From Diplonema japonicum (Eukaryota > Protista > Euglenozoa: Diplonemea), in the NCBI GenBank assembly GCA_964019335.1, contig OZ025710.1, positions 310,001 to 374,000 of the forward strand: a stretch of DNA of 64,000 nucleotides, in the 5' to 3' direction. Position numbers and translations under genes: made by a program. This document shows, piece after piece, positions 22,745 to 59,703 of the stretch. The notes under the pieces are model-generated. The model did no database searches, was not told where the DNA came from, and saw nothing but the letters and a program-made list of their open reading frames with translations. The number at the start of each line of letters is the position of its first letter. Position 1 is the stretch's first letter.

Positions 22745-25316
22745 ATGACCGGCCAGACCACACAAAATCTTATTGAGTCCTTACAACTGAGTCCTGAGCA
22801 TCCCTCACCACCACCTTCACCTTCCGAAAACACGAGCTGCAAGACAAATCGAGACAAGGAAATGCCTTGCCTACTAGCTGATCCTATGGGCAGTATTCAA
22901 GTGCAGCAAGTCACACCACCGAGATCCCCTCCAAGGGGAGATGCTACCGCTGTGAGAGGAAACGCGGACTTGGGCTTTTTAAGGCTACCATCGGGTGATA
23001 TAAGGCCGAACTCCGCACCGGCTGTGATCGCGAGTATGAGTTGTTTTCATTTTCATTACATTTAATCTCATTACAGAACTACCATTGAAACCCTTAACAG
23101 GCCAGATACAAGATCTGGCAGGCAATGTGAATGGGAGCCCTCAAGCGGGAGGGGAGGCCGATTCAATTTTAGACTCGTATCTAGCACAGTCGGAGAAGGC
23201 TCCGGGAGGCCTGCTTTCAACACCGATACAAGGGTCCTTGGATTTCAACTTTCCAGTTGCCGGAGATTCTGGGGAGCAGCAGTCCTTTGTTTCCATCAGT
23301 CTAGAACAGGAACTGAGGAGAGACGCAGAGGCAAGGGGTAGGTCCCTGTCTCCAACACGGTCCACATTTGAACACGGTGTTCACATAGCACAGGTCTTCG
23401 AGAAACCAGAATGTAATATCATCAACGAGAGCAACCCAGCAGCGCAGGATTCCAATGAAACCAGCGACGATCTGTCGGTATGTATAGCAAAAACAAAAAA
23501 AAAAAGGGAAGAAGAAAAAAAAAAAAATAGAAACTCCGAGTCCAACAGCAGCAGCTTGCCACCCAACTTCGGTTCCTGCAAGAACAGGAATGGGCGATAC
23601 TCGACAAGAGGAGCGGATCGTCACTGGGAGAACAGCAGGGCAAGACGTCGGAGGGGTCGCAAAAAGAGGAAGAGGTGTATTTACAGGTAATTGAAATTGA
23701 GGGTAAAAAGAGAAAAAAAAACATAACGCACCGCAGGGCGTGGGGGAACGTGGGGGACCGATGACAGCATCATCTCCAGGGACGAGCCTGAACACCACCC
23801 CCTCTACACTTCCTTCTTCAGCGCCGATGGACTCCAAGCCCCCCCCAGCACTGAACCCACCGTTGTTGTCGCCAAGTGTGGTATGAGTATTTAAAAAAGA
23901 AGTTTTTAAAAAAAAAAAAGCTTGATTTGAACAAAAATCCGTACCCTCCTGGGCAGAGGTTGGACACGTTTGTGGGGCACATCGGGCTGGTTGCCAAAGA
24001 CCAACATGGGTTTGAGGAAACAACTTACTTTTTTTTTTTCTAAAAAAAAAAAAAATTCCCCCCCCAGATGCCGATTCCTGCAGAAGCTATGCGAGGAAGG
24101 CAACCAACGGGAAATCGCCATCATCTTCGACGAAGTGGTACCCTTAACGGGCGAGCTCATGGTCGATCCATTCGGGAACTACCTCATGCAGAGGTTGTGC
24201 GAGTACTGCTCGGAGACACAACGAACAGTGTTAATACAGAAAGTGACAGGAGAAATACCAGGGGTGAGCGCGAACATGCACGGGACAAGGGCGGTACAGA
24301 AAGTAGTGGACCATCTCCGCACACCCCAACACGTAGCCATTATGCGAGACGCCCTGTCAAAACACACTGTGACGATGGTGAAAGACCTCAACGGCAACCA
24401 CGTCATTCAGAAATGTCTGCAGAAGTTCGACTCTGCCAACAAACAGTTCATCTATGACGCCGTGACCAAGCAGCTACAGGACGTAGCAATGCACCGGCAT
24501 GGGTGCTGTGTTCTACAAAGATGCATCGATTTTGGAGCACCCGAACAAAAGATGCAGCTTGCAACTGAGGTAGTTGCCAATGCATTGATACTTGTGCAGG
24601 ACCCTTATGGCAACTATGTGGTGCAGTATGTGCTGGATATGGATGTCCCGGTGATTACGAAGAAAATGATTTCTAATTTCTGTGGGTCGTTGTGCGATCT
24701 TGCGATGAACAAGTTCTCCTCAAATGTCATTGAAAAGTGTATCAAGCTGGCCACACCCGACGCAAGGGCACCGCTTCTTGATGAGCTCTGCGACCCCACC
24801 GTGCTTCCCCGTATGCTTCAAGACCAGTTCGCGAATTACGTGGTTCAAACAGCATTGACAAAGGCTACTCCACATGAATTTAACATGTTGTGCCATGCCA
24901 TTAGACCCTTCTTGCATGTTATCAGGAACACACCACATGGGAAGCGTATTGAAATGAAGATCAACAGAAAACCTGAGCCGCCCACATCTCCCGGCACCAT
25001 GCCCTTGAAAAACCCTTCTCGAGGTGGGGGAGGGTCTCGAGGATCGCCTCTTTCCGCACCTAGCAACACCATACAGTACATTGCCGAGAAGGACCCTCGA
25101 GGGGAAAAGCGGGGTGCTGGGTACACACAAGGAAACCAGAATTGGAACTCTTCTGGCCCACCACCTGTGTCGGCTTACAATAACAATATTCCTAACATTG
25201 TTGCGCACCAACAAGCAAGGCCACCACGCAGACAGAGGTTAAGAGCTGACGCCCCTGCTTATGCTCCCAGAAAGTTAGAACTACATGCAGGTGTCCCACC
25301 TACAGCTCAGTGGTAA
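22745..25316 (+). CDS. Pumilio/PUF RNA-binding protein (Puf4/Mpt5-like repeat code), ~775 aa; exons 22745-23033, 23077-23477, 23531-23686, 23737-23880, 23921-24009, 24068-25316
   Basis: Eight PUF repeats after splicing: KDQHG|CRFLQK, DPFGNYLMQ, MHGTRAVQK, LNGNHVIQK, HRHGCCVLQR, DPYGNYVVQ, NKFSSNVIEK, DQFANYVVQ. Five GT-AG introns keep the frame open. The low-complexity N-terminal exons are less certain. Confidence 0.88.
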
Positions 25317-30932: not shown

Positions 30933-31038
30933 GAGGGGAGAAAAAAAAAAGAAAGAGTGAGAGAGAGAGAGAGAGAGAGACTATCCTTTTTTTTTTTTGT
31001 ATTTGTTTTGCTTTTTCTCCTTTCTTTTTCTTTTTTTC

Positions 31039-31082
31039 AGGCGTCCTGCCACATACCGCAGGTACCCTTAAATGTCTCTTTT
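31039..31082 (+). repeat. 44-nt dispersed hairpin element, copy 1 (AGGCGTCCTGCCACATACCGCAGGTACCCTTAAATGTCTCTTTT)
   Basis: Exact match to 46325-46368; follows a long pyrimidine tract. Confidence 0.9.
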
Positions 31083-32363
31083 CTTTTTTTTTTTTTTTTT
31101 TGCTTTATTTTTATCTTCTTTCTTTTTTATAAAAAAATAACAGGGGGTTAACAGGGCAGTGTACACTGGTCACTAGTTGTCTAATCGATAGGATTACTTG
31201 CTAATTGTCTTAAAAAGAGAAAGAAAGAAAAAAAAATATTTTGGAAAAAAAATAAAAAAAAGGATTGTATAGTTAATATTTTTTTTGGGGGGAGAAGAAT
31301 AAAACAATAAAAAGGAATCCTTTGTAGAAGAGAGAAAAAAAAAAGAGAAGAAAGGGAGAGAGAGGGAAAGGAAAGAGAAATAGACCCCCCCCCCCCTTTC
31401 GTCTTTCACATGTGTCTGTAAACCAAATAAATAAATAAATAAACAGGGGAATGGACATTCTGATGTTGCGTGAAGATGAGAGGACATCCTTCTTTTTTTT
31501 TGACGAAACAAAGAAAAAATGAAGAAAATAAAATAAAAGGGAATCATGAACCCTCTCTCTCTCTAACTCTCTATTCCCGTTTTTTTTTTCTCTTCTTTCG
31601 GACCCTTTCCTTTCAATTTAAATGAAAAAAAAAACACAAATCTACAGCGATTTTTCATTTGCAAGCCTAGGCATCAGAAGCCGCCAGTGAAGTTAAAATA
31701 CTCAGAAAAAAAAAGAAAGAAAGAGGCGATATTTTTTTTCTCTCTATGTCTCTCACTCTTATCTCTTTTCTCTTCTTTTTTTCACCCCTCTCAATTTTTT
31801 TTTCAAAAAAAAAAATATTAATAAAAAATTACAGCCAAATTATCTCCCTCCAGAGTACGATGCTAAGCCTATCTGAGGTTGATTGACTTAAAAAAATTTA
31901 AAAAAAAAAAGAAGAGTGAAATAGAGAGAAAAGGAAGGAAAAAAAGGGAAAGATTGAAAAAAAAAAGAAGAAAATAAAAGAAAGAGGTATCGAAATGTAT
32001 CTGAGGATATACGTATCGAGAATGAAAAAGAAAGAAAAAAAGAAACAGAAGCTCCCCATAAGAGACCGCTGCTGCTTGTCTTGTCCAAAAAAAAAAAAAA
32101 ATCTATTTTTTTTTACCCCCACTCCATTGTTCACCCAACCTACCGCATCATATATTTTTTTTTCTTCTTTCGCACGAAATTTTTTAATTTTGGTCATTCC
32201 TCTTTTTTTTTTTTTTTTTTTTTACCCCCGTGTTTCTTTTCCCCCCCTCCTTTTTTTTTCACCTGCTTTTTTATAAAAACGAAAAAAAAAAAAAAATGTA
32301 TCGAAAAAAAGGGTGTGATTTTTATGATCATCTTCCCTCCTAAAAAATAAAATAAAAAAAAAA

Positions 32364-32669
32364 ATGAACCCCCCCGAGCGTGCACAGGCGATTCTAGAGC
32401 TTTCATCCCTCCTTAGCAGGTATAAGGAGGGTCTAAGACAATGGGGGGAAGGCACAAATTTGGTTCTAGACTGCGAAAAAACTGCAGCGGCCCAGCGAGA
32501 AGCACTCTACGGAGTGCGCACGGAGGACGCAACAACAGAATACTGTGAGAAAGCAACCATCGAAAAAAAACCCGAAGGCGCGAAAACACCCGAAGGGTAC
32601 ACCGAGGTACGGATGAGTTTTGCAGCGATAACACCGAAAGAAAAACTGAAATGGCACATCGTGATATAA
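32364..32669 (+). CDS. Small hypothetical protein, 101 aa
   Basis: A-tract-preceded ATG; coding-like composition between homopolymer spacers; no recognisable domain. Confidence 0.6.
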   Translation: MNPPERAQAILELSSLLSRYKEGLRQWGEGTNLVLDCEKTAAAQREALYGVRTEDATTEYCEKATIEKKPEGAKTPEGYTEVRMSFAAITPKEKLKWHIVI

Positions 32670-32770
32670 AAGAATACATACTTTATTTTTTTTTTTTTTT
32701 GTTTTTTTTTTAAATAAAAAAAAAAACCATAAATCCCACCCAGGGGAAAAAAAAAAAAAAAAAAAAAAAA

Positions 32771-35395
32771 ATGCCCCCGAAAAAAAAAGATGACAATCAA
32801 GCAAAGTGGACAGACGGGATGGACTGCTCCGTGAAGGTGTTCCTTCGAGTGCGCCCGTTCAACAACAAAGAGAAAAAGGAGATGGGCGTGAAAAGTGATT
32901 CAACAGAAGCAGCAAGCATATGCAAGGCGGTGGAAGGGCTGGAAGCAAACTCAGTAGTCCGCACAAAGGGCCCCACCTGCTGCACAATGTCGAATGACGC
33001 TGCTGACAAAAATTCCGGAAAAACTTTATTCCACTTCGACAGAGTTTTCAACACAGTAGCACCAGGCGAAGGTTCCCAAGAAGAAGTCTTCCAAACTATA
33101 GGACCGGACCTCCTGGACGCTTCCCTGTGCGGGTACAACATTTGCTTAATGGCATACGGCCAGACATCAAGCGGCAAAACCTTCACAATGACAGGCGGCG
33201 ACAGCTACCAGTCTGCCATAAAACGTGGCGTCATCCCAAGGTTTCTAGACGGTCTGTTTAACCGCATGCAAGGGAAGGAAGCGTCCGATAAAAACGTGCA
33301 CTTCAAACTAGAAGCAGGCTACATGGAAATCTACAATGAACAAGTTAAGGATCTGCTCAACCCGGGGAGGGCGAAAAAATTGCAAGTTCGAGAACACCCT
33401 GAACAAGGACCCTTCGCAGATGGTTTAACCATGAAACCCATTCTCAACCCGGGCACCATCAACCACCTTCTCGAGACAGGGAACAAGGCACGCCACGTCC
33501 GTGCCACCAAGATGAACGATGTTTCTAGTAGGTCCCATGCAATTCTGCAGCTGGTCTTGACGCAGTACATAACGATTCAAGAGGAAGATGATGAGGAGCC
33601 GACCACCTCAACGGTGATGGCGAAGATGAACCTCGTGGACCTTGCAGGGTCCGAACGGCAGAAATCAACTGGTTCCGAAGGCGTTGGGATGAAAGAAGCA
33701 ATACACATAAACACCGCTCTCCACTGCCTTCGAAAAGTCATCGATTCCCTCACCACTAAGAAAAAACCCACCGCCGGGGGGGCACTTCGTTCACTTCAAC
33801 GAGAATCCATCTTAACATGGCTGCTAGCAGACTCGCTCGGCGGGAACTCTAAAACCGTTCTCATCGCCACCGTGTCACCCGCAGCAGCGAACTTCGCTGA
33901 AACCCTTTCCACTCTGAAATACGCGTCAGCCGCACGAGCAATAGAAAACACGGTCAAGGTGAACACGGACGGGCAAACAGCTGTCATAAAAGCACTTGAA
34001 GAAGAAATTGAGAAACTGCAGAGCCAGCTTAAAACAGCGGACCGCAACGCACGGCAGCAGCAGGTCAACGACTACATCGAGGAACAGCGCCGCTTGCAGA
34101 ACCAGCTCGAGACGGACCACCTCATCCACGAAGAAGAACGCGCCATGCTCAACGCCAACCTAGAACAGCTGGAGATAACCCGCTACGAGCTGGAACGCAA
34201 TATTGAAGATGAAAAGGAGGCCCACGGGAAGCTCAAGAAACAGCTTCAAGTAGCCCAGGGGCAGTTGAAGGGCGCGGTGACCGACCAGGCCAACTATGTT
34301 AAACATCAAAACGATTTGACCAACGAGCTCATCTCGCTAAGAAGAGAATGCGAGGGCAAGACCACACAACTCTTCAAAATGGAACGCGACTATGCCAGAA
34401 ACCTGGAAAGAATGGTTAAGGGCGATAAAAAATGGGAGAGGCTGCTCAAGGAAGCCACAAAACCCATAAAACACAAGGGTGACGGGGGTGCAGGCGACCC
34501 AATGGTGGTTGAGTTATATTTTACCAGATTACAAAACGAGGCGCAAAGCGAAACCATGGAAGCGATGAACAAGGCACTGAAGGACGCCTACTCAGAAAAT
34601 GCAAGATTGGTAACTGCTGTGAGCAGCTCAATGGGCCACGTGGTGGACGTGCAGAATCAGTTAATGAACGAACAGGAAAAAGATGCTACCATTCGTAGAC
34701 AGCAGCAGGACTTAGAAACAGCAAATGCGAAGGAGGAAAAGTACCTGGGGCAGTTGCGTGATCTCTCCATCCAGCACTTGATGCTTCAGAACAGGGTAGA
34801 CACTGCTTCGTCAGCTCCTTCTTCTAGACAGCCTTCACTGTCCCCGCCACCAAACCACGCCCCTCAAATCGTTTATAGACTCCCCGAGGAGCTTAGGGAT
34901 GCTTGCAGTTTCTTTGGTTTCGATGACCCCAAGCTTTTTTCGAAGTGGGTGGTCAAGACACTTGGTTATGAACCTAGTGAAGATGCGTATGTTTTTTTTT
35001 TTTTTTTTTTTGTGTTTTTTTTCCCCCCCCCAATGAGAGAGAGAAAGAGATTTTTTTTTAAAAGGGCTCCTGAGGCAAACGCCCAGGATATACAGCAAGA
35101 TTCTGTGCAACGGACGGACCCTGTATGTGTTTTTTTTTCTTTTCTTTTTTCTATCCCTATTTTTTTGTAGACACTTGCAACTGATGGGGCTCTGTCCTTG
35201 CGTAGCACTGGGTATATTAGCCAAGAGGTAAAAAATAAAAAAAATAAAAATCTCTTTCTCTCTTTCTTTTTTTTTTAAAAAAAAAAACTCCCTTGTTGTC
35301 AAAAAAAAAAAAAAAAAAAAAACACACACACCCTTCCACAGAGAATGAAAGAACTAGTCTCAGAACAGAAGTGGGGAAAGAAGAAGAAGAAGTAA
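32771..35395 (+). CDS. Kinesin (kinesin-3-like motor plus coiled coil), ~794 aa; exons 32771-34986, 35065-35122, 35171-35227, 35342-35395
   Basis: VKVFLRVRP, GQTSSGKT, VREHP..GP, NDVSSRSH, DLAGSE, LTWLLADSLGGNSKT, ETLSTLKYA. The last acceptor is uncertain: the alternative AG at 35343 gives a different C-terminus. Confidence 0.88.
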
Positions 35396-36272
35396 GCTTG
35401 TTAAAGACAGAACATTGAACAGATATCTGACCAGTGGGGTATATGAGCAAGGGACCCATGAACTGACACTTCTCTCCTGAAATTTCATGACTGTTAAGTT
35501 CCTTAGGCGGCCCGAGGACCACCTAAAGTTTAGGAAGGATAGGGGAAAAAAAAAGTGTCCCTAGCCCCACTTACTCTTTGCAGTTTTTTTACTTCGTTAG
35601 GCGACCTCTTTCAACGCTTTCGATTTTACTTCTTTTTTTGAAGAAGAAGAAGAAGAAAAAAAAAAAAAAAAAAAAAAAAAAAACGGAGTGCTTGTACGCA
35701 CAATTATAGTTTTCTTTTGTTATTTCTTATTTCTCCTCGCTCAATTCTTAAAAAAAAAAAAAAAAAAAAAAAGTAAAACAAAAATGAAGATTAGGTGAAT
35801 GGGGGGTTTCTTTTACAAATGTCTTCACTGGCCACCTTTCCCCCTCACCGTGCCCTTGTTCTATTCTGTGTTCTTTTTTTTTTTTTTTTTAAGCATGCGG
35901 TTTTCGTCTCAGGAGCTTGCATGTTAATTTGAATTTTTTCTCTTTTTTTTACTTAACACCTGAACACACACGACACCACCATCTAAAAAATCTTTCATTT
36001 CGTGAGTCATCCCCCGTTTCGCTAAGAGTGTCCGAGACAAAACCTCTAAAGGAGACCACCACTAGGCTTTTTTTTTTGATCTTCCAAAAGGCCGGCTCCC
36101 CCTCCTCCTCCCCTCCCCTCCCTCAGAGAGTTTCGGACATTTCAGAGAGATCCGAGGGGATGGGTAACACAAAAAAAAAAAAAAAAACCTAACTCCGCGA
36201 CACAAGTTGTTCCTATTATTGAGTGGACCCCTTCCCCCCATCCCATCCCGTGTGTCCTTATTGTGTAAAGCA

Positions 36273-36304
<32 letters not shown>

Positions 36305-36387
36305 AACCCCTTTTTTTTTCTATCTTCTCCCGCATATATCGCCTAAATAGACGGGGGGATAAGAAAAAACAAAAACAAAAAAAAAAA

Positions 36388-37827
36388 ATGTTCGCTCGCT
36401 GTTTACAAACTGCCGCAAGAAATAAAAGAGTAATGCAGCGAGCAGTACCGGTGGCGGCCCTCCAGGCGAGACACGCTACAGCGGTACCAAATGTAGCACC
36501 CGGCCTGCAGGACCCGACAAGGAAAAAGGTCATGATTTTCAACAGAACCGCAAAGAAAATCCAACGCGCAAAAACCGCAAACCTCAGTATCGACGAATGC
36601 AAGCTCCACGACCACATAGCCGGGATAGTGATGGAGAGGCTGGGGTACATCACAAGGGAGTTCCCAACCGTCTTGGAACTGGGCTGCGGAAGAGGAATAT
36701 TAAGCAAGAAGTACCTCGAAGCGAACCCAGAAGGCCTGCAAACATACATGCAATGCGACATGAGCCAAGAAATGCTGGACAGCTGTTATGAGGAAACATG
36801 CAAAGCGGTACCAAAGGGCGTAACACTAGAACAGTACAACGCAGATGAAGACAATACACTTCCCTTCAAGAAGAGATCAGTAGATCTCATCATATCGATG
36901 CTGTCCCTGCACTGGGTCAACGACATCGAAGCCACGCTCAAACAATGCCGAACCCTTCTAAAGCAAGACGGTGTACTGTTGATCTGCGTTTTTGGCGGGA
37001 AATCCCTTGCAGAGCTTCAGTCATGCTTCACAGTCGGCGAACAAGAACGCGACGGAGGGGTGTCCCCCCACATCAACCCCTTCTTAACAGGTCCTTCAAT
37101 GGGCGACTTACTCTCCAACGCTGGGTTCAACTTCCCAACAGTCGACATTGACAGATTTACATTCTTTTGGAAGACAACCTTCCATCTGATGGAGTACCTG
37201 CAGATGATAGGGGAGTCATCGTGTCTACACGGAAGGAGGAGATTTGTTTCAAAAGACGTTCTTTTGGCAACTGCTGCGATTTACGACCGATTGTGGGCGG
37301 AGGAAGGGAAGGGGATACCAGCAACATTTGAAATCATCCATGCTGTTGGATGGTCACCTCATCCATCACACGCTGAACCTTCTGCGCGAGGCAGTGGATC
37401 TACCTTGTCGTTGAAAGATATTGCAGAATCACTTGGCGAGGAGTTGATGTCTGAGGACAGTGTGGGGACAGAGCTTGATAAGAAGAAAAAGCTTATGAAA
37501 ATCCTGAAGGAGCACGGGGTGTCGAACTCGCGGTTGAAAACTCTAGAAGACCTCATGGAGCGCCGCTTAATGGGCGACAACAGCCTTGAACTGGAGGAAC
37601 AGATCATGGCCGCCAGGAACGAGATCCAATCTTCTTTCGACAAGAAGGACCTTGCCGATGTGCAGCACAACCTCCCATCCGCGGAAAATACCAGTTACAA
37701 GAAGAGCATCACACATATTAAGAACGCCACGGTCATCACCCCCGACCAGAACTACTCAGAGAGAAAGGTCACCGAGGCACTCGAACGGAGCTCCCGGTTG
37801 TCAAACCCGGGACATCCCGAAAAATGA
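36388..37827 (+). CDS. NDUFAF5: Complex I assembly factor 5 (SAM-dependent arginine hydroxylase) with C-terminal extension, 479 aa
   Basis: Mitochondrial-type presequence MFARCL; IFNR.AK..QR, VLELGCGRG, SMLSLHWVND, EQERDGGVSPHINPF, LMEYLQMIGES, IPATFEII..VGW.P...P.ARGS. Confidence 0.92.
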   Translation: MFARCLQTAARNKRVMQRAVPVAALQARHATAVPNVAPGLQDPTRKKVMIFNRTAKKIQRAKTANLSIDECKLHDHIAGIVMERLGYITREFPTVLELGCGRGILSKKYLEANPEGLQTYMQCDMSQEMLDSCYEETCKAVPKGVTLEQYNADEDNTLPFKKRSVDLIISMLSLHWVNDIEATLKQCRTLLKQDGVLLICVFGGKSLAELQSCFTVGEQERDGGVSPHINPFLTGPSMGDLLSNAGFNFPTVDIDRFTFFWKTTFHLMEYLQMIGESSCLHGRRRFVSKDVLLATAAIYDRLWAEEGKGIPATFEIIHAVGWSPHPSHAEPSARGSGSTLSLKDIAESLGEELMSEDSVGTELDKKKKLMKILKEHGVSNSRLKTLEDLMERRLMGDNSLELEEQIMAARNEIQSSFDKKDLADVQHNLPSAENTSYKKSITHIKNATVITPDQNYSERKVTEALERSSRLSNPGHPEK

Positions 37828-37840
37828 GAGGACAGTGTTC

Positions 37841-37890
37841 TTTCTTTATCTTTTTTTTTTTTTTTTTTTTTTTTTTCTCCCCTAAATCAG
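37841..37890 (+). promoter_or_regulatory. Putative trans-splice acceptor (polypyrimidine tract + CAG) upstream of the LRR gene
   Basis: About 40 nt of T/C, then ..CCTAAATCAG 54 nt before the ATG, with no obvious partner donor. Representative of many spacers in the window. Function is inferred. Confidence 0.45.
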
Positions 37891-37944
37891 AAAGGCAGGG
37901 GGAGGGGCCACGGAAGACCACAAAAAAAAAATATAAAAAAAAAA

Positions 37945-38832
37945 ATGGATAAATGTTGTACAGGGTGCTTCGCTCAGTTTTTCAAAAGAAACAAGCAAGC
38001 GTCTCGGAACGCGGAGCGCAGCAGATTAGTAGCGGAAGACACCGCCATGGAGGTCAGGGCGAGGAGTGACAAGTTGGGACCGATGGAAATACAAGAAAAA
38101 CTAAGAGAAAGCAGGATCTTCGAATCTGTATCTGTGGTGAGACACGTGGGCAGCGGCAGCGCCGCTGCACCATCGGCTACCGACGGAGATTCGATAGACA
38201 GCAGAATGATAACAAACTATCTGGACTCTGTAGAAGGAGGCGAGAACCCTGAATCAAGCTACCTCCTAGAGATAAAAGGCCCCATAACTGAAACAGATGA
38301 AACAAGCGTGGCCAAGGGACTGGACCTATTGGAGACAGTTCTATTGGATGACAGCGATACGCGGCGGTTTCACCTAGAGGCCATCCGCGCGGTTAACCTT
38401 GAGGTTCGATTCCCCTTGACATCATTCTTAAACAATTTGTTGATGTCTGGGTCTGTTACATCCGTTACGTTGATGAATTGTGTGTTGACCCCGCCTGTGT
38501 TGGGGACAGGTCTTCATGTAACAAGGAGCAAGACCCTTACAAATATTACGTTAAAGTCCTGTAGCCTAACCGATGCGCACCTCTCGTTCTTCATCACTTC
38601 TCTTCAGGAGAATGGGACGCTTTTACCGCACTTGGAATCTTTCAACATAACGGGGTCCTTTACAAACGACACCGTACTGCCGCTCCTCGATCTTCTTGAA
38701 GAGGAAGCGCCAAAGCTGCGCAGTCTAACTTTTCCCAGGCGGGCGGAGAATTTTGTGAAACAGCATTTGCTTTGTGCTACGTTGCCGCACCTTGTGCTGA
38801 ATGGGAAGAAGGTGCGACATGTTTTGACATGA
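37945..38832 (+). CDS. Leucine-rich-repeat (RNI-like) protein with N-terminal Cys cluster, 295 aa
   Basis: LxxLxL-type repeats (VTSVTLMNC, LTNITLKSCSLTD, LESFNITG, LRSLTF); MDKCCTGC may be an acylation site. Confidence 0.7.
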   Translation: MDKCCTGCFAQFFKRNKQASRNAERSRLVAEDTAMEVRARSDKLGPMEIQEKLRESRIFESVSVVRHVGSGSAAAPSATDGDSIDSRMITNYLDSVEGGENPESSYLLEIKGPITETDETSVAKGLDLLETVLLDDSDTRRFHLEAIRAVNLEVRFPLTSFLNNLLMSGSVTSVTLMNCVLTPPVLGTGLHVTRSKTLTNITLKSCSLTDAHLSFFITSLQENGTLLPHLESFNITGSFTNDTVLPLLDLLEEEAPKLRSLTFPRRAENFVKQHLLCATLPHLVLNGKKVRHVLT

Positions 38833-39901
38833 AATAATAATATTTAACAAAAAAAAAAAAAAAAAAAAAGATAGAAAAAGATTATTTTAACCTAACCTCT
38901 ACTCCACCATCGTGTCTTTTTTACGAAATAAAAAAAAATAAAAAATAAAAAAAAAGATGGAAGAAAAGAAAAAAAAAAATGTGGTCAGTTTTTTTTTCTC
39001 TTTTTTTTTTCGTTAAGTTTCTTTCGGATGGTTTTTTTCTTCTTCTTTTTTTTTCTTTTGGTGGATCGGTTAGCTAGCACCCCCTCCCCAATCATAGTGA
39101 ATTCTCTTTTTATTTTATTTTATATTTTTTTTTATAGTTCTCTTTCTTTGTTATTTGTGTGCTGCCCTCTGCTATGTCTGCCTTTTTATAAAAGAAATTT
39201 GAAGAGAAAAAAAAACAAAAAAAAAGGCACCCCTCTTCTTCTTCCACTTCCAGAAGGGCGGCAACTTTTATTTTTTAACAAATACCCCCATGCCCATAAT
39301 TCACTGTTTTTTCCACTCTAAGACTGCAAAAGGCCAAAAAAAAAAAAAGTGTTGTTTTTTTTTTTTCTTTTTTTTTTCTGTTCCCCATTCCCCTCTTTTT
39401 TGAGGTGGATTCGTTTTTAAACACTTCTGTCTCCCCCCCCCATTTTTTTTCTTTGATAGGAAATCGACTTGGGACAACCCGTTACACTTGCGAGGGATCT
39501 TTTTCTTTCTTCTTTCTCCGTCTCAGGGTTCCCAAAAAAAAAATAAAGATACACCAACAATTGCGGGAAAGGGTTTTTCTAATTGAGCAAAAAAAAATTT
39601 TTTTTTTTGGAGGCTCCACGGAAGACCACGTTAGTTGGAGGAAACGATATTTTTTAACAAAAAAAAAAGGCACCATGACCCGGAACTGGAACTGATGCAA
39701 ATACAAAAAAAAATCTTTTCTTTTTGCAGGACCCCCTTCCCTCACCCCCCCCCATCTTTGACAGTCTTAATACACCCCCCCCTATTTTATATTCTCTTAG
39801 TTCTTGTTTCGTTTATTTCTTTCCTTTTTTTTTCAATTTTCGTTTCCAATAAAAAAAAAACCCAAAAAAAAAAGGAGGCGGAAGGAGGGGGAAAAAAAAA
39901 G

Positions 39902-42900
39902 ATGAAACGATGGAGCTTAGCGATAAAAGACTGCATGGGCGCAGATGTAAGAGGAATGCTTGGCGCATTTGAAGAACCAACAGATTGGGTAGAACAAAGC
40001 CCAGCGGGTAAGGTGGTGAACCCAGCACAAACAGGCGGCGGTGTGGTAAGGGAAAAATTAGTAGACATAGGACGCATTGACATCGACGCACGGCCGCGAC
40101 GTAACGAAGGCGATGGGAAGTGGTTGGTAGCGAACGTAGTAAGAAGCGATCTGGGCAGAAAGCACGGGATGAACGCTTTGAAGCAGAAAGCAGGCAACGC
40201 GCTCCTCCCAGACACGTCTTTAACACAAATCTACAAATCCCGGCACACCTCCCTCGACACCGCCACAACATTAACCGAAAAACTCGAAACCAGCACGGTA
40301 CCCGACACAGTAGTAACAAGTGGCAACATATCACAATTGCTATCCCACGCAGCTGCCCCTCATCCCCTCTCGAACGGACCTGCCCTCACTCCTGAAGACA
40401 GCATGAGCCACTCCATGGAGGCCGACCGTCGAAAGGACTCTGAAACTCGTATGAAATACGAGGTGTTCACCAACAAGATCACCCAACGTACTATGCACAA
40501 CCAGTTCGTCCCCGACAGATTCGAAGGTCCCAAGTCCGTTTTCAAATTCTATTATGACGGTGATGACCTGCAATACAACCCTCACAAGCCTGTCTGGAGG
40601 CAGATGATGGACCAACGGAAAGGAGTCTCCGTCACTGTCGGTGGGGACCTCGACGCGAAACGCCTCAAAAATTTTCAAAAATACATCAGAAGAGTCTCGC
40701 AACTCGGCAGCCCGGAAACAGTAGGTGATCTTCAAAAAATGCTATCAGAACAACGTGCACTGGTTTCCGACTTGAAAGACGAAACCTTCAGCACCGGTAC
40801 CCGTTACAACTCCATGACTTCTAGACGGGACGCCTTTATGAGACGCAGAATGGCCTCCCCAACAGCGATACTAAGGGAACAGGTTAATGCGGAGCTCCCG
40901 CTGGTGGAGAGGATTGTGTCAAAGAGGAAGAGCGACCCACGGAAAATGCTGACGACAGACGAGGCCTTTGAGCTTGCGGAAGCGGATGTAGATGATGCGA
41001 AGGCGTCGCTCCTCAGGCAGAGGGAGCACCTCAAGGAACAGAATTTCTCCGATGAACGTGAAGACAAACTCGTCCCCCCTACCGTGCCCACCGCTTACCT
41101 CCCTGAGCACAAGCGGGCCACAAGATGGCTTGCTGATTATTCCATGCCAGGTGACTTAGAAGACCCTCGTACCCACTCACCTTTCCTCCTCGCGCAGGAT
41201 ACTTCTACGCCTCTCACTTCTGAGTTGAAAGGCCGCAAGGTCGGGGTGTGGGAGGCAGCTGACGGTGCAGGAATGCCAGGAACACACCGTGCCGTCGCGG
41301 AGAAGATCAAGGACGTCTTCGACTACCAGCGTGCCACCGACAGGGTCTCGCTTGGGCTGCAGGAGAAGGCGGTGGCTGATTGGAGGCCCACGAAATCCGT
41401 TGACGAAGCCGTGTTCCAACAGACACAGGTTATGAAGGGCGGGTTCGACAGGAGGCCTATTGGGTATACATATATATTTTTAGAAAAAGAAGGGGGGGGG
41501 AAAAAAAACACAGTTTCTGGTCGAAGGAAAACCCAGACCTCCGTACCACTACTCAATGGGACGATGTGGTATGTTTTTTGAAAAATAAATTGGAAACCTT
41601 TTAAAAAAAAAGATCGGTGCGCCTGTGGCGTCTGACGGCAACACCATCGACAGGGTTAGGTTCTACCAAGTCCGTGCTAGGTATCCTCATTTTTATTTAC
41701 ATGAATATTTAAAAAAAAAAAAAAAACAGATGGGAAAAGCGAAAGGCCCTTGCAATCCAGTTCGGGTTGGAACCCAAGCCTGACGAGACCATCCAAGAGA
41801 GGAACATAAGGAGGGTCGAGCTCGACAAGGTAGCACCACCCCCACCCCACCCTACTAAACAAACACCACAGAGACTCGAACACGTTGTGGAGAACAAAGA
41901 AGTCGACGGTGCCGTCCTTGCAGCATGGTCAGACGACAGGAGGAACGAGCAGTGGCATGGAAAACGGCACAACAGGGACACGATGGGCGACAGGATGTCC
42001 AGCTACCCGTTGACACAGCGTCCCTTAGGGGACTTGCTAGCCTACCAAAGCCTCTCCGACCCAAGAGTGAGGGAAGAAGACCTGTCAGAAGAGGTTAGGA
42101 CGAACCAGAAGTTCAACCAGTCATGGTTCAAGGACGACGCGGAGCTTGTGATGCGACGAAGGAACGACCCAAGGGTGGACTACCTCGCATCGGCTGGGAT
42201 AAAACCGGAAAGGCTCCGATTTCAAGTCGGATGCGCGCACTACATGCAGGTCCAAGACGCTCTGTGGGAGCTTCGTGTGTACCGTAATGAACCCGAGCCT
42301 GGTCAGGCAGACAGGACTTGGCTGGAGAACACAACCTTCATCAACATGATGAACGTTGACTGGGCCAAACAGGAGGTCGTCAAGATCGAAAAGGAACTGG
42401 AAGCAAAGCTTCTGGCGGAATACAGAACACACAGCACGAAGGAGCACGGAATCGCTGAGGAGACAATGGACCGAACCGACGACTCCCAAGACAGCCTCGG
42501 CTGGAAGTCCCCGTCGGAAATCGATAAATGGAGAACCACGGACGGAGCAAGAGAAGGCTTGGAGCTCGAACGTGAATTATCATACCCGATAGCAGCAGTG
42601 AACAATATGGGCAGCCATAGGTGGTTGGCAAAAACCCCTTGGGACAGGCTTGCTGCAAATTCGCTTGTTTCTAAACAGCTTCGGCCAGAGGACGATGCCA
42701 GGGGGACTGAGCTCGGGCCTTCATTCTACTTCAACAGGAACAGACAGCATTACTACAGGATGCCTGTGCAGCGGTACAGGGCATACGGTCCCGAGCTTCG
42801 GGAGATGCAGTTCCTGTCTGAGAAGCTCGTCCCTCACGATATGGTAAGGAAGATCAAGAACTACTACGCGGTGGCTAGGCATAATATGATCCCCTTCTTC

Positions 42901-43097
42901 TCAGAGCATGTCGGGAAGAACGGACCCAAGTTCATGCACACTCCGAAGGTACTGTTTTTACCCCCACACCCACACCCACACCCACACGGACATATTTTTT
43001 TTTTTCTCAGGTGACCTTTGATCACATTGGTCTGCACGACGATCTTGAAGACTATGTGAGGATCAACCCGCACTTGGCGAAGTGGGAGGAGATGTAG
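39902..43097 (+). CDS. Hypothetical protein, ~996 aa; exons 39902-41463, 41514-41568, 41613-41680, 41730-42948, 43011-43097
   Basis: Four GT-AG introns (50, 44, 49, 62 nt) join ORFs 39635 and 41767 in frame (..RRPIG|FWSKENP..WDDV|IGAPV..VRAR|WEKRK..HTPK|VTFDH..WEEM*). No domain recognised. Confidence 0.75.
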
Positions 43098-43266
43098 AAA
43101 AAAAAAAAGAAAAAAAGAAAAAAAAAAAAGAAAAAAACCAACACACGGAACGGAAACGAAAAAAAGTGTGTTGAAGTGTGTTTTTTTTTTGTTGATTTAC
43201 CCCCTTTGAAGAAAAAAAAAAAAGAAAAGTACAACAACAAAAAAAAGGAGCGGGGGGGGGAAAAAA

Positions 43267-43491
43267 ATGGTATTCAGCAAAACTGCCTTCTCCCCCCAGC
43301 TGGGGTATTACTGTCACGAGGTGGTAGACCTCAAACACGAGCCGGGGCCAACCACATTCGGGATAGGGGCATGCGCAGACCAAGGGTTTGTGAAAAGGGT
43401 CGGAACGCTGCCGCCGCCGTCAACTGATGCGATTTTCGTAAAGGACTGTGGAGAGGTGACGAAGAGGAGCCCAGGAGCAACGTGCTCGTGA
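43267..43491 (+). CDS. Small hypothetical protein, 74 aa
   Basis: A-tract-preceded ATG; GC-balanced island exactly spanning the ORF. Confidence 0.5.
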   Translation: MVFSKTAFSPQLGYYCHEVVDLKHEPGPTTFGIGACADQGFVKRVGTLPPPSTDAIFVKDCGEVTKRSPGATCS

Positions 43492-43631
43492 AGAAAGGAG
43501 AGAAACAAAAAAAGAAATATATTTACACGTGCCTATCCCCCTCCCCCGTCCTCCTAAGATTTCATTTTAGTTTCCATTCTGCAACTATTTTATCCGAGAA
43601 GAGGGATTCAAAAAAAAAAAAAAAAAAAAAA

Positions 43632-44327
43632 ATGGCACTCCTCACGCACCCGACGTCGCCTCCGAGAGTCTCTCCATGGCAACTCAGTGCGTGGCCGGAA
43701 AAGGATCCGGAATGTAAAGAATGTGGTGGGCATGGGTCAAACCCTGCTGCGGCACATGAGGACAGTGTGATTGAGGAGATTCAAGGCTCGCCTTGTCCGG
43801 CAAAGAAGGAGCATGTGATGCTGCAAAAGGAGAGCATGAGGATGATGATGGTGTTGAGTGAGCGGAGCTTTGCACCAGAGAAGCCTGGGGGGTCCGAGGC
43901 GGCCATCACAAAGGACAGAAGAAGAGCTTTTGAAATCTTCCAAACTGTTGTAAAGGGAGAGAGGATGATGTACGCCTTCGATCTAGAACAGGCATTTGAA
44001 ACTGCAGGGGTGAAGGGTATCGACCAACATCAGATCTCCGTCCTCATGCACAAATTCAACCTCCAACCTGGCGACCCTTTGCCGTTTGACCACTTCAGTG
44101 CAATGTGTGACACTCTCCTCAGCGGCCAAATTCCCCCACACCCCTCCTCCCCTCCAAGAGACCTTACGCCACCTTGTCCAGGCTCCCCAGAGTATAAAGC
44201 CGGCAAGAAGGAGAAACCCTCAGCCAAGACGTTCCGCATGGCGAACTCCTGCCCCTTCCATCTCCAGATGGACCAGAAGATGCAAGTACCGCAGAAAGCA
44301 AGGGTGCAGCACGGGTTCGGAAAGTGA
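43632..44327 (+). CDS. Protein with degenerate EF-hand pair, 231 aa
   Basis: RRAFEIF..DLEQAF..G..ISVLMHKFN..GDPLPFDHF resembles a calmodulin-like lobe lacking Ca-binding Asp residues. Confidence 0.6.
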   Translation: MALLTHPTSPPRVSPWQLSAWPEKDPECKECGGHGSNPAAAHEDSVIEEIQGSPCPAKKEHVMLQKESMRMMMVLSERSFAPEKPGGSEAAITKDRRRAFEIFQTVVKGERMMYAFDLEQAFETAGVKGIDQHQISVLMHKFNLQPGDPLPFDHFSAMCDTLLSGQIPPHPSSPPRDLTPPCPGSPEYKAGKKEKPSAKTFRMANSCPFHLQMDQKMQVPQKARVQHGFGK

Positions 44328-44591
44328 GTTCGGCTGAAAACAAACTTCACGCCTTGCTGTTTGTTCGCAGGGTGTCCTTTTTTTTTTTCTCGTAAAACCC
44401 TCCATTCTCTTTGTTATGTACTGTAAGCCTTTCCCACCACCCCCGTTGCCCCCTTATATCCCAGCAACAATTTCTTCCCCTTCCATATATAAAAAAAAAC
44501 AAAAAAAGATTTTTTTTTTTTTTTGTGCATACTCTCGGCGAAAACACAAAAAAAGGGGGGAAACAAATCAGAAAAAGAAAAAGAAAAAAAA

Positions 44592-46178
44592 ATGTTGGTC
44601 CAAAAAATGGTAATCGCGGTGGTGCTCCTCACCGCAACCATGTCGGAGTGTAGAAAAGTGACCGTGTCTGTGAAGGGACGGTGGACATTTATCGACAAGT
44701 TTGTCTTCGATGAAAGAGACAGCAAGCTGGGCAACGCACCACCGCTACTAGAGTTCTACACCAAAGACGCCCCAAAAGATGGCTACAGGCTGGTACTGTA
44801 CAGCGACCAACCGTACAGCTGGCCTGCGGCAAAAGGCTACATAAGAGACGACGAACTATGGAAGAACGATGAACTGGGCGCCTGCGAGATCCTCTCAACG
44901 TGCCCCAGCACGACAAACTGCAGCACCTGCATGTTGAGATCGTGCAACGGGGCAATACCCATCGCAGCGACGTGTGACGACCCGAAGTCACACTGCATAG
45001 GCACCAAAGCCAACCCATACAGGCAGCTCATCGAGCAGCACACACGGCCAAGATTCTGGTTCATCGGCGTCACCAACTGCGAGGTGAACAAGACCCCCTT
45101 GCTGCAAACAAAAATATACGTCACATTCCGTAACCCCGGTGGCTGGTTCCGCGAGGAATTCGGTGTCGATGAACAGGGGATCCTCGAGTTCCAAATTATC
45201 ATTGTACCGTACTTTGCCATCATGGCCGGGGCCTATGCTGGCATGACCTACCGTGAGAGGAAGCGACAAGGCGACGCTGCCGAGATCCACGCTGTCATCA
45301 AGTGGTTCCTTCTAATCATCGCGCTGCAGCTTATCTATTATACAGACAAGTTGAAGACATACTCATTCGTTGCTACCTATGGTGAGGGGTACCAGTACTT
45401 CAGCTCCGCGGGGTTCCTCGCCTCTGTGATGTTTATCATGCTTGTGGTCAACTTCTCTACGGGTTTCTCGGCGATCGGAACGCAGTTCTTCGCACCGTTG
45501 AAGGACAGTTTCCACCAGAAGGCCATCGCAGGTATGGGTCTGTTCCTCATCCTGTGGAACTGTGTGTTGTTTGTGTACTCAAGGCTCAACGAGGATCCGA
45601 TGGATGTTGAGTCGCCGTATCAAACGTGGCCCTCCATCCTCCTCAGCACTGCAAGAGTGCCCATCATCGGGTACTACATGTGGTGTTTGTACAACACAGT
45701 CCAAGAGGTACCGGAGCAGAAGAAGTACTACGTGAAGTGGGGTGCGGTCTTCTTCTCGTACCTCTGTGCGTTGCCGCTGTTCACGGTGCTTGCGAGTGTT
45801 GTGTCTCCTCACGTGAAATTCCGGGCGGTTGACTGCACAGTGGACGTTGTTACTGTAGTTTCGATGTCATGTATGTGCTACCTTCTCTGGCCTGGTCCAG
45901 GTTTGACAAATGTACTGTCGAACACATACACCCTGTCTGCTACTGGTCCCACTCATATGCCAATGTCTGATGGTGGTGCACTGTCGCCTCCTCCGCCGCC
46001 TATTTCCAATACTGTATCTTCCATGCACCATGTTGATGGTGATGATGGTGTTGGTGAGGGTGAGGTTCCTCTTGTTAATGACGACACCCGAGAGGGCGGC
46101 CTTGAGGTTACCATTAATGAAGCGGACGACCTTGAGGGTGATGGGGCGAATCCGCTTAGACCACTGGTGGCGAGTTAG
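44592..46178 (+). CDS. GPR180/TMEM145-like (GOST family) seven-transmembrane protein, 528 aa
   Basis: Signal peptide; W.FIDKF; RPRFWFIGVTNC; FRNPGGWFREEFGVDEQGILE; about 7 hydrophobic helices; YQTWP motif. Confidence 0.8.
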   Translation: MLVQKMVIAVVLLTATMSECRKVTVSVKGRWTFIDKFVFDERDSKLGNAPPLLEFYTKDAPKDGYRLVLYSDQPYSWPAAKGYIRDDELWKNDELGACEILSTCPSTTNCSTCMLRSCNGAIPIAATCDDPKSHCIGTKANPYRQLIEQHTRPRFWFIGVTNCEVNKTPLLQTKIYVTFRNPGGWFREEFGVDEQGILEFQIIIVPYFAIMAGAYAGMTYRERKRQGDAAEIHAVIKWFLLIIALQLIYYTDKLKTYSFVATYGEGYQYFSSAGFLASVMFIMLVVNFSTGFSAIGTQFFAPLKDSFHQKAIAGMGLFLILWNCVLFVYSRLNEDPMDVESPYQTWPSILLSTARVPIIGYYMWCLYNTVQEVPEQKKYYVKWGAVFFSYLCALPLFTVLASVVSPHVKFRAVDCTVDVVTVVSMSCMCYLLWPGPGLTNVLSNTYTLSATGPTHMPMSDGGALSPPPPPISNTVSSMHHVDGDDGVGEGEVPLVNDDTREGGLEVTINEADDLEGDGANPLRPLVAS

Positions 46179-46324
46179 GATTAAAAGGGGGAGGGGGGGG
46201 AATAGAAAAAAAGGGGGGGTGTTCATAGATGTGATGTAATGTAGCGTGTTCGGGAGAAATGTGGATGTGTTTTCTTTTCTTTTTTTTTCTTTTTTTTTCT
46301 TTTTTTTCTTTTTTTTCTTTTTTT

Positions 46325-46368
46325 AGGCGTCCTGCCACATACCGCAGGTACCCTTAAATGTCTCTTTT
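46325..46368 (+). repeat. 44-nt dispersed hairpin element, copy 2
   Basis: Exact match to 31039-31082; follows a T/C tract of about 55 nt. Confidence 0.9.
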
Positions 46369-46890
46369 TTTTTGCAGTGTTTTTTTATATGTATTTCTTG
46401 TAATGAACAACAAAAAAGAACACAAAAAAGGGTCGTGGTGGATTTGTACCGGCACAGAACACCTTCTGTTATGTTTCTTTCTTCCTTTCTTTTTTTTTTT
46501 CTCTCTTTCCTTGATAAGAAAAGAAGGGGGGGGGGGGACCCCAATATATTGAAAATGAAATTCTTGTTGATGTTTGCTTTGAAAAGAAGGGGAAAAAAAG
46601 AGAATAGGGCGGGTAGCAGCGCGTTGGACTTCGGTTGTGCACAAAACAACAAATCAAAAACCGACTCTTTTTTTTTGTTTTCGTTTCCTTTATCTGCCTG
46701 TGTCTTCTCCCCCCCCGCCCGCCCCCGCCCCTTCTTTTTATGTTCTCTCATCACAAAAGAAAACTGACGTTATACATTTTTTAATATATTTTCACCCCCC
46801 CCCCCCCGTGTAATTCAAAAAAAAGAGAGAAGGCGTAAAAAGAAGGGAAACCTAAAAGGAAAAAGGAAAAAAGGGAAAAAGAAAAAAAAG

Positions 46891-59182: not shown

Positions 59183-59204
59183 TTCTTTTTTCGTCTTTTT
59201 TTTT

Positions 59205-59690
59205 ACGCGGAGTCGCTGTTGAAATGGATGTCGGAGCTAAGATGGGTTAAAGAAGACACGACGTCGGAGGTGACGGCGGTGGAGTTAGCCCTAGACTTCG
59301 AAGCGACGACACGAAGATCGCTGGGAATGACGCAGGATGAAAAGGCGCGAAGGATCAAGAAACTGATCCAAAAGGTGAACGACAGGTGCGCATTACAAGG
59401 AAGGAAAATGCCTTTCCCGGCGAAGAACAAAACGAGAGTGAAGTCCCTCATGGCAATAGGAGGGAAGGCGGCGATAGGCTTTGCAAGGAGACCGATCTTC
59501 GCCTCACGAGAAACCCAGGACAGGCTAAGAGAGCTGAAGACCAACCTGAAGAAGGACCGCATCAACCGTCTGCGAAAGACACTGGTATCCGCCATCGGAA
59601 CGAAAGCGAGGCTCCAAAAAGGAAGCATCAAGAGATAGACCCCCACCCCCCCTAAGGGTGGTCCTCGAGTGGGATTTGCCCTTAAACATC
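59205..59690 (+). mobile_element. Probable 5'-truncated non-LTR retroelement 3' end, copy 1 (alternatively a small basic protein from ATG 59228)
   Basis: Frame starts abruptly after a T-tract and contains W..ELRW..VTAVELALDFE, which I associate with C-termini of protist LINE ORFs. The C-rich 3' tail is shared with copy 2. Confidence 0.45.
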
Positions 59691-59703
59691 GCCTTTTTTT
59701 TAA

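What the first reader, a model, noticed from the sequence alone, without database searches (positions are those of the whole stretch)
31039..46368. Exact 44-nt hairpin element after poly(Y)-AG whose loop is antisense to the genome's 5' splice site
Seen: AG|GCGTCCTGCCACATACCGCAG|GTACCCTTAAATGTCTCTTTT occurs identically at 31039 and 46325 in otherwise unrelated spacers. Each copy is 106-146 nt past a stop codon, directly after a long pyrimidine tract, and followed by T-rich sequence. It folds as stem CCTGC/GCAGG with loop CACATACC. ACATACC is the perfect complement of G|GTATGT, and GTATGT is the commonest donor here (7/27; GTATG 13/27). The element also reads as a 21-nt micro-exon (31041-31061) with its own CAG|GTA donor buried in the stem. 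Inference: a dedicated RNA-processing module, e.g. a cis-acting U1 mimic that captures an SL-RNA or intron donor, a punctuation mark for polycistron cleavage/polyadenylation, or a very short mobile element targeting acceptors. I do not recognise it as any known family.
Basis: partly seen in the sequence, partly recalled or inferred. Interest (0 to 1): 0.82.

Follow-up and report, generated by a model that had tools for sequence, protein, structure and literature searches.

The report
Tail stubs of a T-tailed LINE
The repeated 44-letter hairpin is not a host RNA-processing signal. It is the last 40 or so letters of a jumping gene (a LINE ending in a run of T) that lands in T-rich spacers, and four out of five copies stop right at the foot of its terminal hairpin.

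Summary
AG plus a 38-mer plus Ts occurs identically at window 31039 and 46325, and chance expects 0 such matches. The genome holds at least 511 copies.

The 38-mer is the last 38 nt of the 53-nt 3' UTR of a ~6.25-kb LINE that encodes an APE endonuclease and a reverse transcriptase and ends in a T-run.
- The AG belongs to the LINE (CTCTTCAG|GCG).
- The pyrimidine tract upstream is the T-tract target, and the T-run downstream is the element's tail.
- In an unbiased sample of 100 copies, 80 are stubs whose 5' ends lie 0-7 nt before the 38-mer. That point is the base of the predicted 3' stem-loop. The other 20 have scattered 5' truncations.
- A variant subfamily shows the same ratio (46 stubs, 10 long copies).
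- A related LINE family has the same tail layout with a different loop, and it also leaves stubs.
- The loop varies as much as its flanks.
- The SL RNA donor is G|GTACCC, not G|GTATGT.

Stubs point the same way as the neighbouring genes in 28 of 30 loci. T-run availability does not explain this.

The scan had already found the parent LINE on other DNA of this genome (s1-867015). What is new here is the stub class and its sharp boundary.

The parts
30986..31037 (+). T/C-rich tract upstream of copy 1. Read as the remainder of the T-tract target. It is not part of the repeat.
   Evidence: Sequence read. In 77 of 80 sampled stubs, at least 6 of the 12 nt before the junction are T.
31038..31078 (+). 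Stub copy 1: CAG plus the 38-mer (31041-31078). This is the last 41 nt of the LINE 3' UTR. The stem-loop spans 31039-31068.
   Evidence: Exact match. Identical to the 3' end of the LINE copies L134 and L135. Fold.
31079..31101 (+). T tail of copy 1 (23 nt, with one C).
   Evidence: The pure T-run after the 38-mer has a median length of 17-18 nt in both stubs and long copies.
46271..46324 (+). T/C-rich tract upstream of copy 2 (the target T-tract).
46325..46364 (+). Stub copy 2: AG plus the 38-mer (46327-46364). Here the 5' end is at -2, and a T, not the LINE's C, stands at -3.
46365..46373 (+). T tail of copy 2 (9 T).
59204..59702 (+). 5'-truncated copy of a sister T-tailed LINE family. It has a C-terminal ORF remnant ending ...QKGSIKR with stop TAG at 59636-59638, a 17-nt spacer, the stem-loop GGGTGGTCCTCGAGTGGGATTTGCCC, then TTAAACATCGCC and a T-run. 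It is used here as the comparator for the tail architecture.
   Evidence: sequence; 30% identity, E = 1e-11, to the C-terminus of the family-1 ORF, with the same last seven residues. (145-170 genome copies). (shared stem, different loop).

Best explanation
Each 'hairpin element' is a tail-only stub of a young non-LTR retrotransposon (LINE).

Shown:
- The parent is about 6.25 kb and encodes an APE-type endonuclease and a reverse transcriptase.
- It begins with the end of the host spliced-leader exon followed by GT.
- Its ORF stops at TAG.
- It ends with a 53-nt 3' UTR, ATTGAGACTCTTCAG plus the 38-mer, followed by a T-run of variable length.
- The 38-mer and the AG before it fold into a stem-loop whose base is that AG.
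- About 80% of copies end at their 5' side 0-7 nt beyond that base.
- About 20% are ordinary 5'-truncated or full-length copies.

Inferred:
- The element integrates by target-primed reverse transcription into T-tracts. An A-run on the opposite strand primes on the RNA's U tail.
- The stem-loop with the CCCUUAAA motif is the tail that its own reverse transcriptase recognises, as in 'stringent-type' LINEs.
- cDNA synthesis very often ends just after the recognised stem-loop has been copied. The cause could be abortive elongation, or an RNA whose 5' end lies there.
- The short cDNA is then joined to the upstream Ts of the target.

On this reading, the poly(Y)-AG in front, the T-run behind and the loop complementary to GGTATGT are by-products of the element's own sequence and of its target choice. 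They are not a host signal.
For: Copy number and flanks:
- 511 genome copies with at most 3 mismatches and 0 in the reversed-pattern control.
- Flanks are unrelated.
- 107 copies carry 33 or more further nt upstream. These run on for 91 to more than 1571 nt, with 5' ends scattered and each preceded by a T-run.

The parent element:
- L134 and L135 share 3.1 kb at 99.7% identity, ending in the 38-mer.
- Their ORFs hit RVT_1 (3e-22) and Exo_endo_phos (1e-5), and L1 ORF2p and R2 proteins in the PDB (about 2e-13).
- The ORF stop TAG lies 16-18 nt before the 38-mer.
- The 5' end, at L135:~837, is TTTCTGTACTTTATTG|GT.

The stub class:
- Unbiased 100-copy sample. The number of LINE bases kept upstream of the 38-mer was 0 in 1 copy, 1 in 6, 2 in 23, 3 in 9, 4 in 10, 5 in 28 and 7 in 3. 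That makes 80 stubs, and 73 of them keep the AG. The remaining copies kept 17 (1), 24 (1), 31 (2) and 33 or more (16).
- The CCTGTC variant subfamily has 46 stubs and 10 long copies, the same ratio.
- The stem runs from A(-2) to U28.

The sister family:
- It has a homologous ORF end and the same layout. The outer stem and CCCTTAAA are conserved, the inner stem has 2 compensatory pairs, and the loop differs. It also occurs mostly as stubs.

Other:
- T tails have the same median length, 17-18, in stubs and long copies.
- Stringent-type LINE proteins recognise the stem in general and the loop specifically (PMC4176376).
Against: - No empty site or target-site duplication could be shown. The flanks are T-runs and the window loci are single-copy.
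- No RNA data were reachable, so neither the 5' end of the template nor any use of the stubs by the host was seen.
- The cause of the hot spot is inferred, not shown.
- Some junction bases recur that the parent does not have (GCAG, CCAG, CTCAG, GTCAG, AAG). These could be untemplated additions, or a sign that stubs are copied from other stubs.
- The 28/30 sense bias exceeds what T-run availability predicts and is unexplained.
Confidence: 0.85

Rival explanations
1. The stubs are a self-propagating minimal non-autonomous element, a tail-only 'micro-SINE'. A sense-oriented stub is transcribed within the polycistronic precursor. The LINE reverse transcriptase binds its stem-loop and primes on the U-run behind it. 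It then stops at the U-run in front, which pairs with the T-tract target. Stubs therefore beget stubs.
For: - The stub equals the whole predicted recognition module.
- Every stub is flanked upstream by a T-run that could give microhomology.
- Non-parental junction variants recur (GCAG, CTCAG, GTCAG, AAG).
- 28 of 30 stubs lie in sense to the genes, so they would be transcribed on the right strand.
Against: - The stub-to-long ratio is the same (about 4:1) in the main family and in the CCTGTC subfamily. A fixed by-product rate predicts this. Independent amplification does not.
- 5' ends are fuzzy (0-7 nt) rather than inherited as one form.
- Shorter stubs of 10-14 nt also exist.
Confidence: 0.2
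2. The stubs originated from the LINE but have since been co-opted by the host. Each one places poly(Y)-AG, a hairpin and a U-run in a spacer. They could therefore serve as SL trans-splice acceptors or as 3'-end and polyadenylation cues.
For: - The layout resembles a 3' splice site: a T-tract, then (C/T)AG.
- There is a strong sense bias relative to genes.
- All sampled stubs lie in spacers, 15-839 nt after a frame's stop and 87-1351 nt before the next ATG.
Against: - They show no fixed position relative to genes.
- Only a small share of spacers carry one.
- Loop and flanks decay at about the same rate, roughly 1.5% per nt.
- Copies are very young (many are identical), so there has been little time for co-option.
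- No RNA evidence exists.
Confidence: 0.1
3. One reading: the loop acts as a cis U1 mimic that captures the donor of the SL RNA or of an intron.
For: The loop's ACATACC is complementary to G|GUAUGU, and (G)/GTATG is the cis-intron consensus in D. japonicum.
Against: - The SL RNA gene found here has the donor TTG|GTACCC, which shares only GGTA with the loop's target.
- The sister LINE tail has another loop.
- About 12% of copies carry loop variants, mostly CACACACC, which breaks the pairing.
- The element is the 3' end of a transposon.
Confidence: 0.02

Closest known systems
5'-truncated ('dead-on-arrival') copies of APE-type LINEs made by target-primed reverse transcription, as in L1 (my own knowledge of the field)
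   Same: - All copies share a common 3' end.
- 5' ends are variable among the long copies.
- The homopolymer tail varies in length.
- Copies are dispersed with unrelated flanks.
- The parent encodes APE and RT.
   Different: - The tail is a T-run, not an A-run, and the target is a T-tract.
- 80% of copies end within a 7-nt zone only 39-45 nt from the 3' end, instead of showing a broad distribution.
- The 5' end of the full element is a piece of the host spliced leader.
Stringent-type LINE 3' tails (eel UnaL2, zebrafish ZfL2-1 and ZfL2-2; PMC4176376)
   Same: - A short conserved stem-loop sits next to the terminal repeat.
- The stem architecture is shared between related families while the loop is family-specific. 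That matches the published bipartite recognition of stem and loop.
   Different: - Binding by the cognate protein was not tested here.
- The terminal repeat is a T-run rather than a short microsatellite.
- To my knowledge, stubs that consist of nothing but the tail are not a described feature of those families.
Tail-sharing SINEs (non-autonomous elements that borrow a LINE's 3' tail)
   Same: They carry the LINE's 3' recognition sequence and outnumber the parent.
   Different: There is no tRNA-, 7SL- or 5S-derived head and no room for a promoter in 39-45 nt. Rfam finds nothing.
SIRE/VIPER, RIME/ingi, NARTc/L1Tc and SIDER elements of kinetoplastids (my own knowledge)
   Same: They are short retroposon-derived pieces lying in the spacers and UTRs of trans-splicing, polycistronic euglenozoan genomes. 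Some influence mRNA processing or stability.
   Different: Those are hundreds of nt long, are mostly defined by a shared 5' signature, and are A-tailed. No sequence relation was seen or tested here.

Membership tests
Non-LTR retrotransposon (LINE) copy | Sequence continuity with the 3' end of an element that encodes a reverse transcriptase and an endonuclease | tested here: met
   107 copies extend upstream into the ORF. RVT_1 at 3e-22 and Exo_endo_phos at 1e-5. L1 ORF2p and R2 hits. The ORF stop lies 16-18 nt before the 38-mer.
Non-LTR retrotransposon (LINE) copy | Common 3' end with variable 5' truncation | tested here: met
   Copy lengths run from 39 nt to about 6.25 kb. There is an extra hot spot at the base of the stem.
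Non-LTR retrotransposon (LINE) copy | 3' homopolymer or simple-repeat tail of variable length | tested here: met
   T-run of 0-68 nt, median 17-18. The tail is T, not the usual A.
Non-LTR retrotransposon (LINE) copy | Target-site duplication, or a matching empty site | tested here: inconclusive
   Both flanks are T-runs, so a duplication cannot be delimited. A search for a paralogous empty site of copy 2 found none.
Stringent-type LINE 3' tail | Conserved stem-loop next to the terminal repeat, with a family-specific loop | tested here: met
   Fold z = -3.05. Between the two families the outer stem is invariant, the inner stem has 2 compensatory pairs, and the loops differ.
Stringent-type LINE 3' tail | The cognate ORF protein binds the tail, and the tail is needed for retrotransposition | not testable with these tools
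   Needs biochemistry.
SINE | Head derived from a small RNA with an internal promoter | tested here: not met
   Stubs are 39-45 nt and consist of the tail alone. No Rfam family reaches threshold in the window.
Host RNA-processing signal (U1 mimic or polycistron punctuation) | Present at most spacers, or at a fixed position relative to genes | tested here: not met
   Two copies in a 64-kb window with many spacers. Distances to the neighbouring frames are 15-839 nt and 87-1351 nt.
Host RNA-processing signal (U1 mimic or polycistron punctuation) | Loop under stronger constraint than its surroundings | tested here: not met
   About 12 of 100 copies with perfect flanks have a changed loop. This is about the same per-nt rate as the rest of the 38-mer.
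Host RNA-processing signal (U1 mimic or polycistron punctuation) | Loop complementary to the SL RNA donor | tested here: not met
   SL RNA gene tandem in L136: the exon ends ...TTTATTG and the intron starts GTACCCAATC.
Host RNA-processing signal (U1 mimic or polycistron punctuation) | SL-addition, cleavage or poly(A) events map to the element | not testable with these tools
Introner-like element (antisense copy spliced out as an intron) | Antisense copies interrupt open reading frames, and removing them restores the frame | tested here: not met
   Only short frames of 150-420 nt, running through A-runs, could be joined. 28 of 30 copies are sense and intergenic.

The most novel reading that the evidence does not exclude
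The reverse transcriptase of these T-tailed LINEs has a near-programmed stop at the foot of its own recognition hairpin. Most integration events therefore deposit only a 40-nt module of T-tract, AG, hairpin and U-run, in sense orientation, into intergenic T-tracts. These modules seed new 3' splice-site-like acceptors, or 3'-end cues, that the trans-splicing host then uses. A transposon would in this way keep rewriting the punctuation of polycistronic transcripts.
Probability: 0.1. Interest if true: 0.75.

Novelty: new variant of a known kind. Interest (0 to 1): 0.4.

Why it matters
It removes a tempting false lead. The poly(Y)-AG-hairpin motif looks like splicing machinery but is transposon debris.

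It also documents an unusual retrotransposition outcome in a poorly studied marine protist.
- The LINE has a T tail and targets T-tracts.
- It leaves mostly 40-nt stubs that end at the foot of its 3' hairpin.
- The stubs almost always point the same way as the genes.

The sharp boundary marks, in natural data, the minimal tail module that the enzyme probably recognises. It could therefore guide work on how stringent-type LINE enzymes start and abandon cDNA synthesis.

The unexplained sense bias may reflect a link between integration and transcription or replication, or selection, in a polycistronic genome.

Genome annotators of diplonemids should mask these stubs before inferring splice or processing motifs.

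Tried and rejected
- Rfam, at gathering thresholds, on the whole window: no family.
- Exact 38-mer scan of metagenome contigs: nothing.
- SL-relic idea: the stubs are not preceded by SL sequence. The SL exon and its donor were read from the SL RNA gene.
- Trans-splicing of LINE RNA at CAG|GCG as the source of the fixed 5' end: rejected. 73 of 80 stubs keep the AG and none carries an SL.
- Antisense-intron (introner) idea, prompted by the 41-nt median intron length and A-rich tracts reported for D. japonicum: no convincing frame-restoring case. A real window intron (23034-23076) is unrelated.
- T-run microhomology alone as the cause of the hot spot: unlikely. The sister family has a C-rich spacer and still leaves stubs at the stem base.
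- Ribosome-collision idea. The stop codon lies 16-18 nt (family 1) or 18-20 nt (family 2) before the stem, so a terminating ribosome's leading edge would fall near the stub ends. I could not separate this from the stem-base explanation, because both families have similar spacing.
- Empty-site search for copy 2: the flanks are single-copy.
Only 5 family-2 copies in loci already held could be checked, and all were co-oriented with family 1.
- The species name (Diplonema japonicum) comes from earlier notes. I did not test it.
Full report
OBSERVATION

The repeat is real. The 42-nt core matches exactly at 31041-31082 and 46327-46368 on the + strand, with none expected in 100 shuffles. The sequence shows AG directly before both copies, a long T/C tract before that, and a T-run after. 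It runs from the A of the AG to U28 around the 8-nt loop CACAUACC (-11.8 kcal/mol, z = -3.05). Rfam has no family for it.

WHAT IT IS

- The window's genome (62.5 Mb, 132 contigs) holds 511 copies of the 38-mer with at most 3 mismatches, on both strands, and none of the reversed control.
- In the first 32 copies read, 30 showed the same picture as the window: unrelated flanks, a T-rich tract, NAG, the 38-mer and a T-run.
- Two copies shared 33 more bases upstream. A search with that extension found 107 copies.
- Most of those continue for hundreds of bases or more. Their 5' ends are scattered and each abuts a T-run.

Two long copies share 3.1 kb at 99.7% identity, ending in the 38-mer. Their frames carry a reverse transcriptase domain (RVT_1, 3e-22) and an endonuclease domain (Exo_endo_phos, 1e-5). 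They also match L1 ORF2p and R2 proteins in the PDB at about 2e-13. The ORF ends ...QKGSIKR, with TAG lying 16-18 nt before the 38-mer. The 3' UTR is therefore ATTGAGACTCTTCAG plus the 38-mer, 53 nt in all, followed by Ts. The full element is about 6.25 kb. Its first bases are TTTCTGTACTTTATTG|GT, which is the end of the host spliced-leader exon.

It follows that the AG is the LINE's own CTCTTCAG, the upstream pyrimidine tract is what remains of a T-tract target, and the downstream T-run is the element's tail. I confirmed its 3' hairpin and T-run, its T-tract landing sites, its co-orientation with genes and its 5' end.

THE STUB CLASS

I took the first 100 perfect copies in contig order as an unbiased sample. 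The number of LINE bases kept upstream of the 38-mer was:

| Bases kept | 0 | 1 | 2 | 3 | 4 | 5 | 7 | 17 | 24 | 31 | 33 or more |
|---|---|---|---|---|---|---|---|---|---|---|---|
| Copies | 1 | 6 | 23 | 9 | 10 | 28 | 3 | 1 | 1 | 2 | 16 |

- So 80% of copies end in a 7-nt zone, and 73 of those 80 keep the AG. The other 20% behave like ordinary 5'-truncated LINE copies.
- The whole-genome counts agree: 107 of 511 copies, or 21%, are long.
- The zone coincides with the base of the predicted stem.
- A subfamily marked by a C-to-U change in the stem (CCTGTC, which still leaves a G-U pair) has 46 stubs and 10 long copies. The ratio is a constant of the process, which fits stubs as by-products of each active lineage.
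- T tails are equally long in stubs and long copies, with medians of 17.5 and 17.
- A few still shorter stubs of 10-14 nt exist. One stub has landed in the T tail of another.

COMPARISON WITH A SISTER FAMILY

- The sampled loci and the window itself (59204-59702) contain a second tail, GGGTGGTCCTCRAGTGGGATTTGCCCTTAAACAT, with 145-170 genome copies.
- The window copy carries an ORF remnant that is 30% identical to the family-1 C-terminus and has the same last seven residues. After it come TAG, a 17-nt C-rich spacer, the stem-loop, TTAAA and a T-run.
- When the tails are aligned, the outer stem (A/G)GG...CCCUU and the CCCUUAAA motif are conserved. Two inner pairs change on both sides, and the loop is different.
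- Most family-2 copies listed with their upstream bases are also stubs that begin 1-3 nt before the stem.
- This is the pattern described for stringent-type LINEs, whose protein recognises the stem in general and the loop specifically (PMC4176376).

- Loop invariance: among 100 copies with perfect flanks, about 12 have a changed loop. Seven of these are CACACACC, which breaks the complementarity to GGTATGT. That is about the same per-base rate as in the rest of the 38-mer.
- SL donor: the SL RNA gene occurs as a tandem with a 352-bp unit. Its 39-nt exon is AACCAACGATTCTAAAGCTACAGTTTCTGTACTTTATTG and its donor is G|GTACCC, not G|GTATGT.
- Cis donors: the consensus (G)/GTATG is published for D. 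japonicum. The complementarity is therefore a true string fact, but nothing suggests that it is used.
- Position: stubs lie 15-839 nt after a frame's stop and 87-1351 nt before the next ATG. They are not a fixed punctuation mark.
- Orientation: copies are not randomly oriented. In 28 of 30 loci the longest open frame is on the element's strand (26/4 and 23/7 using one flank only). T-runs of 10 or more make up 64% of T- plus A-runs on that strand near stubs, and only 38% in the window. The bias therefore exceeds target availability (p = 4e-4).
- The five family-2 copies I could check point the same way, so the bias is not tied to the family-1 loop. I have no tested explanation. Integration linked to transcription or replication, or selection against antisense copies, are both possible.

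MECHANISM

Shown: the identity of the parent, the tail architecture, the T-tract context, the two populations of copies, and the constant ratio between them.

Inferred:
- Priming of reverse transcription by an A-run on the opposite strand, on a U tail.
- Recognition of the stem-loop by the element's own protein.
- An end to cDNA synthesis just past the stem. This could happen because elongation aborts once the bound hairpin has been copied, or because the template is a short protected tail RNA.
- A terminating ribosome at the nearby stop codon is a third possibility that I could not separate from the others.

The main rival is that stubs copy themselves from read-through transcripts. The recurrent non-parental junction bases favour it. 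The constant stub-to-long ratio argues against it.

LIMITS

- No empty site was found.
- The metagenome scan was blank.
- The species name comes from earlier notes.

VERDICT

The RNA-processing reading is not supported. The element is the tail stub of a LINE, a new variant of a known kind. Two points stay open: the sharp stop at the stem base and the sense bias.

Noticed in passing
L136 (G000:C15:778800-779700), minus strand: Two tandem SL RNA genes 352 bp apart. The 39-nt exon is AACCAACGATTCTAAAGCTACAGTTTCTGTACTTTATTG and the intron starts GTACCCAATC. The gene ends in a GC-rich hairpin plus ACAC plus a T-run. This is the same hairpin-then-T-run ending that the LINE tails have.
   Followed up: partly
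genome-wide: 253 places carry the SL exon end CTGTACTTTATTG followed by GT or GG and at least six different continuations (for example GTCGCTCCCC, GTCGTTCGTG, GTGTCCGACC, GTATCGACC, GGTGCATGGGG, GTGGTGGGGAT). Several retroelement families therefore appear to be headed by the spliced leader.
   Followed up: no
L005:~286-356 and L027:~575-646 (upstream flanks, element orientation): A third short repeat lies between T-runs: GGGCCGTTGYTAACCACTTCGTTTCCTATCATWGTGA followed by Ts. It may be the stub of yet another T-tailed family.
   Followed up: no
window 59204-59702 and 59703-59820: A truncated sister-family LINE copy is followed at once by sequence that again resembles a LINE C-terminal region (…RKKRRPFPADEQKRVKSLIA-like). 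This suggests stacked insertions just before the GC-rich block.
   Followed up: partly
window 60000-64000: GC content rises to 63-66% and the long open frames switch to the minus strand (60217-61581, 61849-63744). This is probably a convergent strand-switch or a different gene class.
   Followed up: no
window 30940-30985 and 31220-31400: Long purine tracts, (GA)n and A/G-rich runs, flank copy 1 on both sides. In the window, A-runs of 10 or more outnumber T-runs on the coding strand (68 against 41).
   Followed up: partly
L016, 47 nt upstream of the central stub: An 11-nt stub (TTAAATGTCTC plus T6) sits directly in front of a full stub. This is a nested insertion into an earlier T tail.
   Followed up: partly
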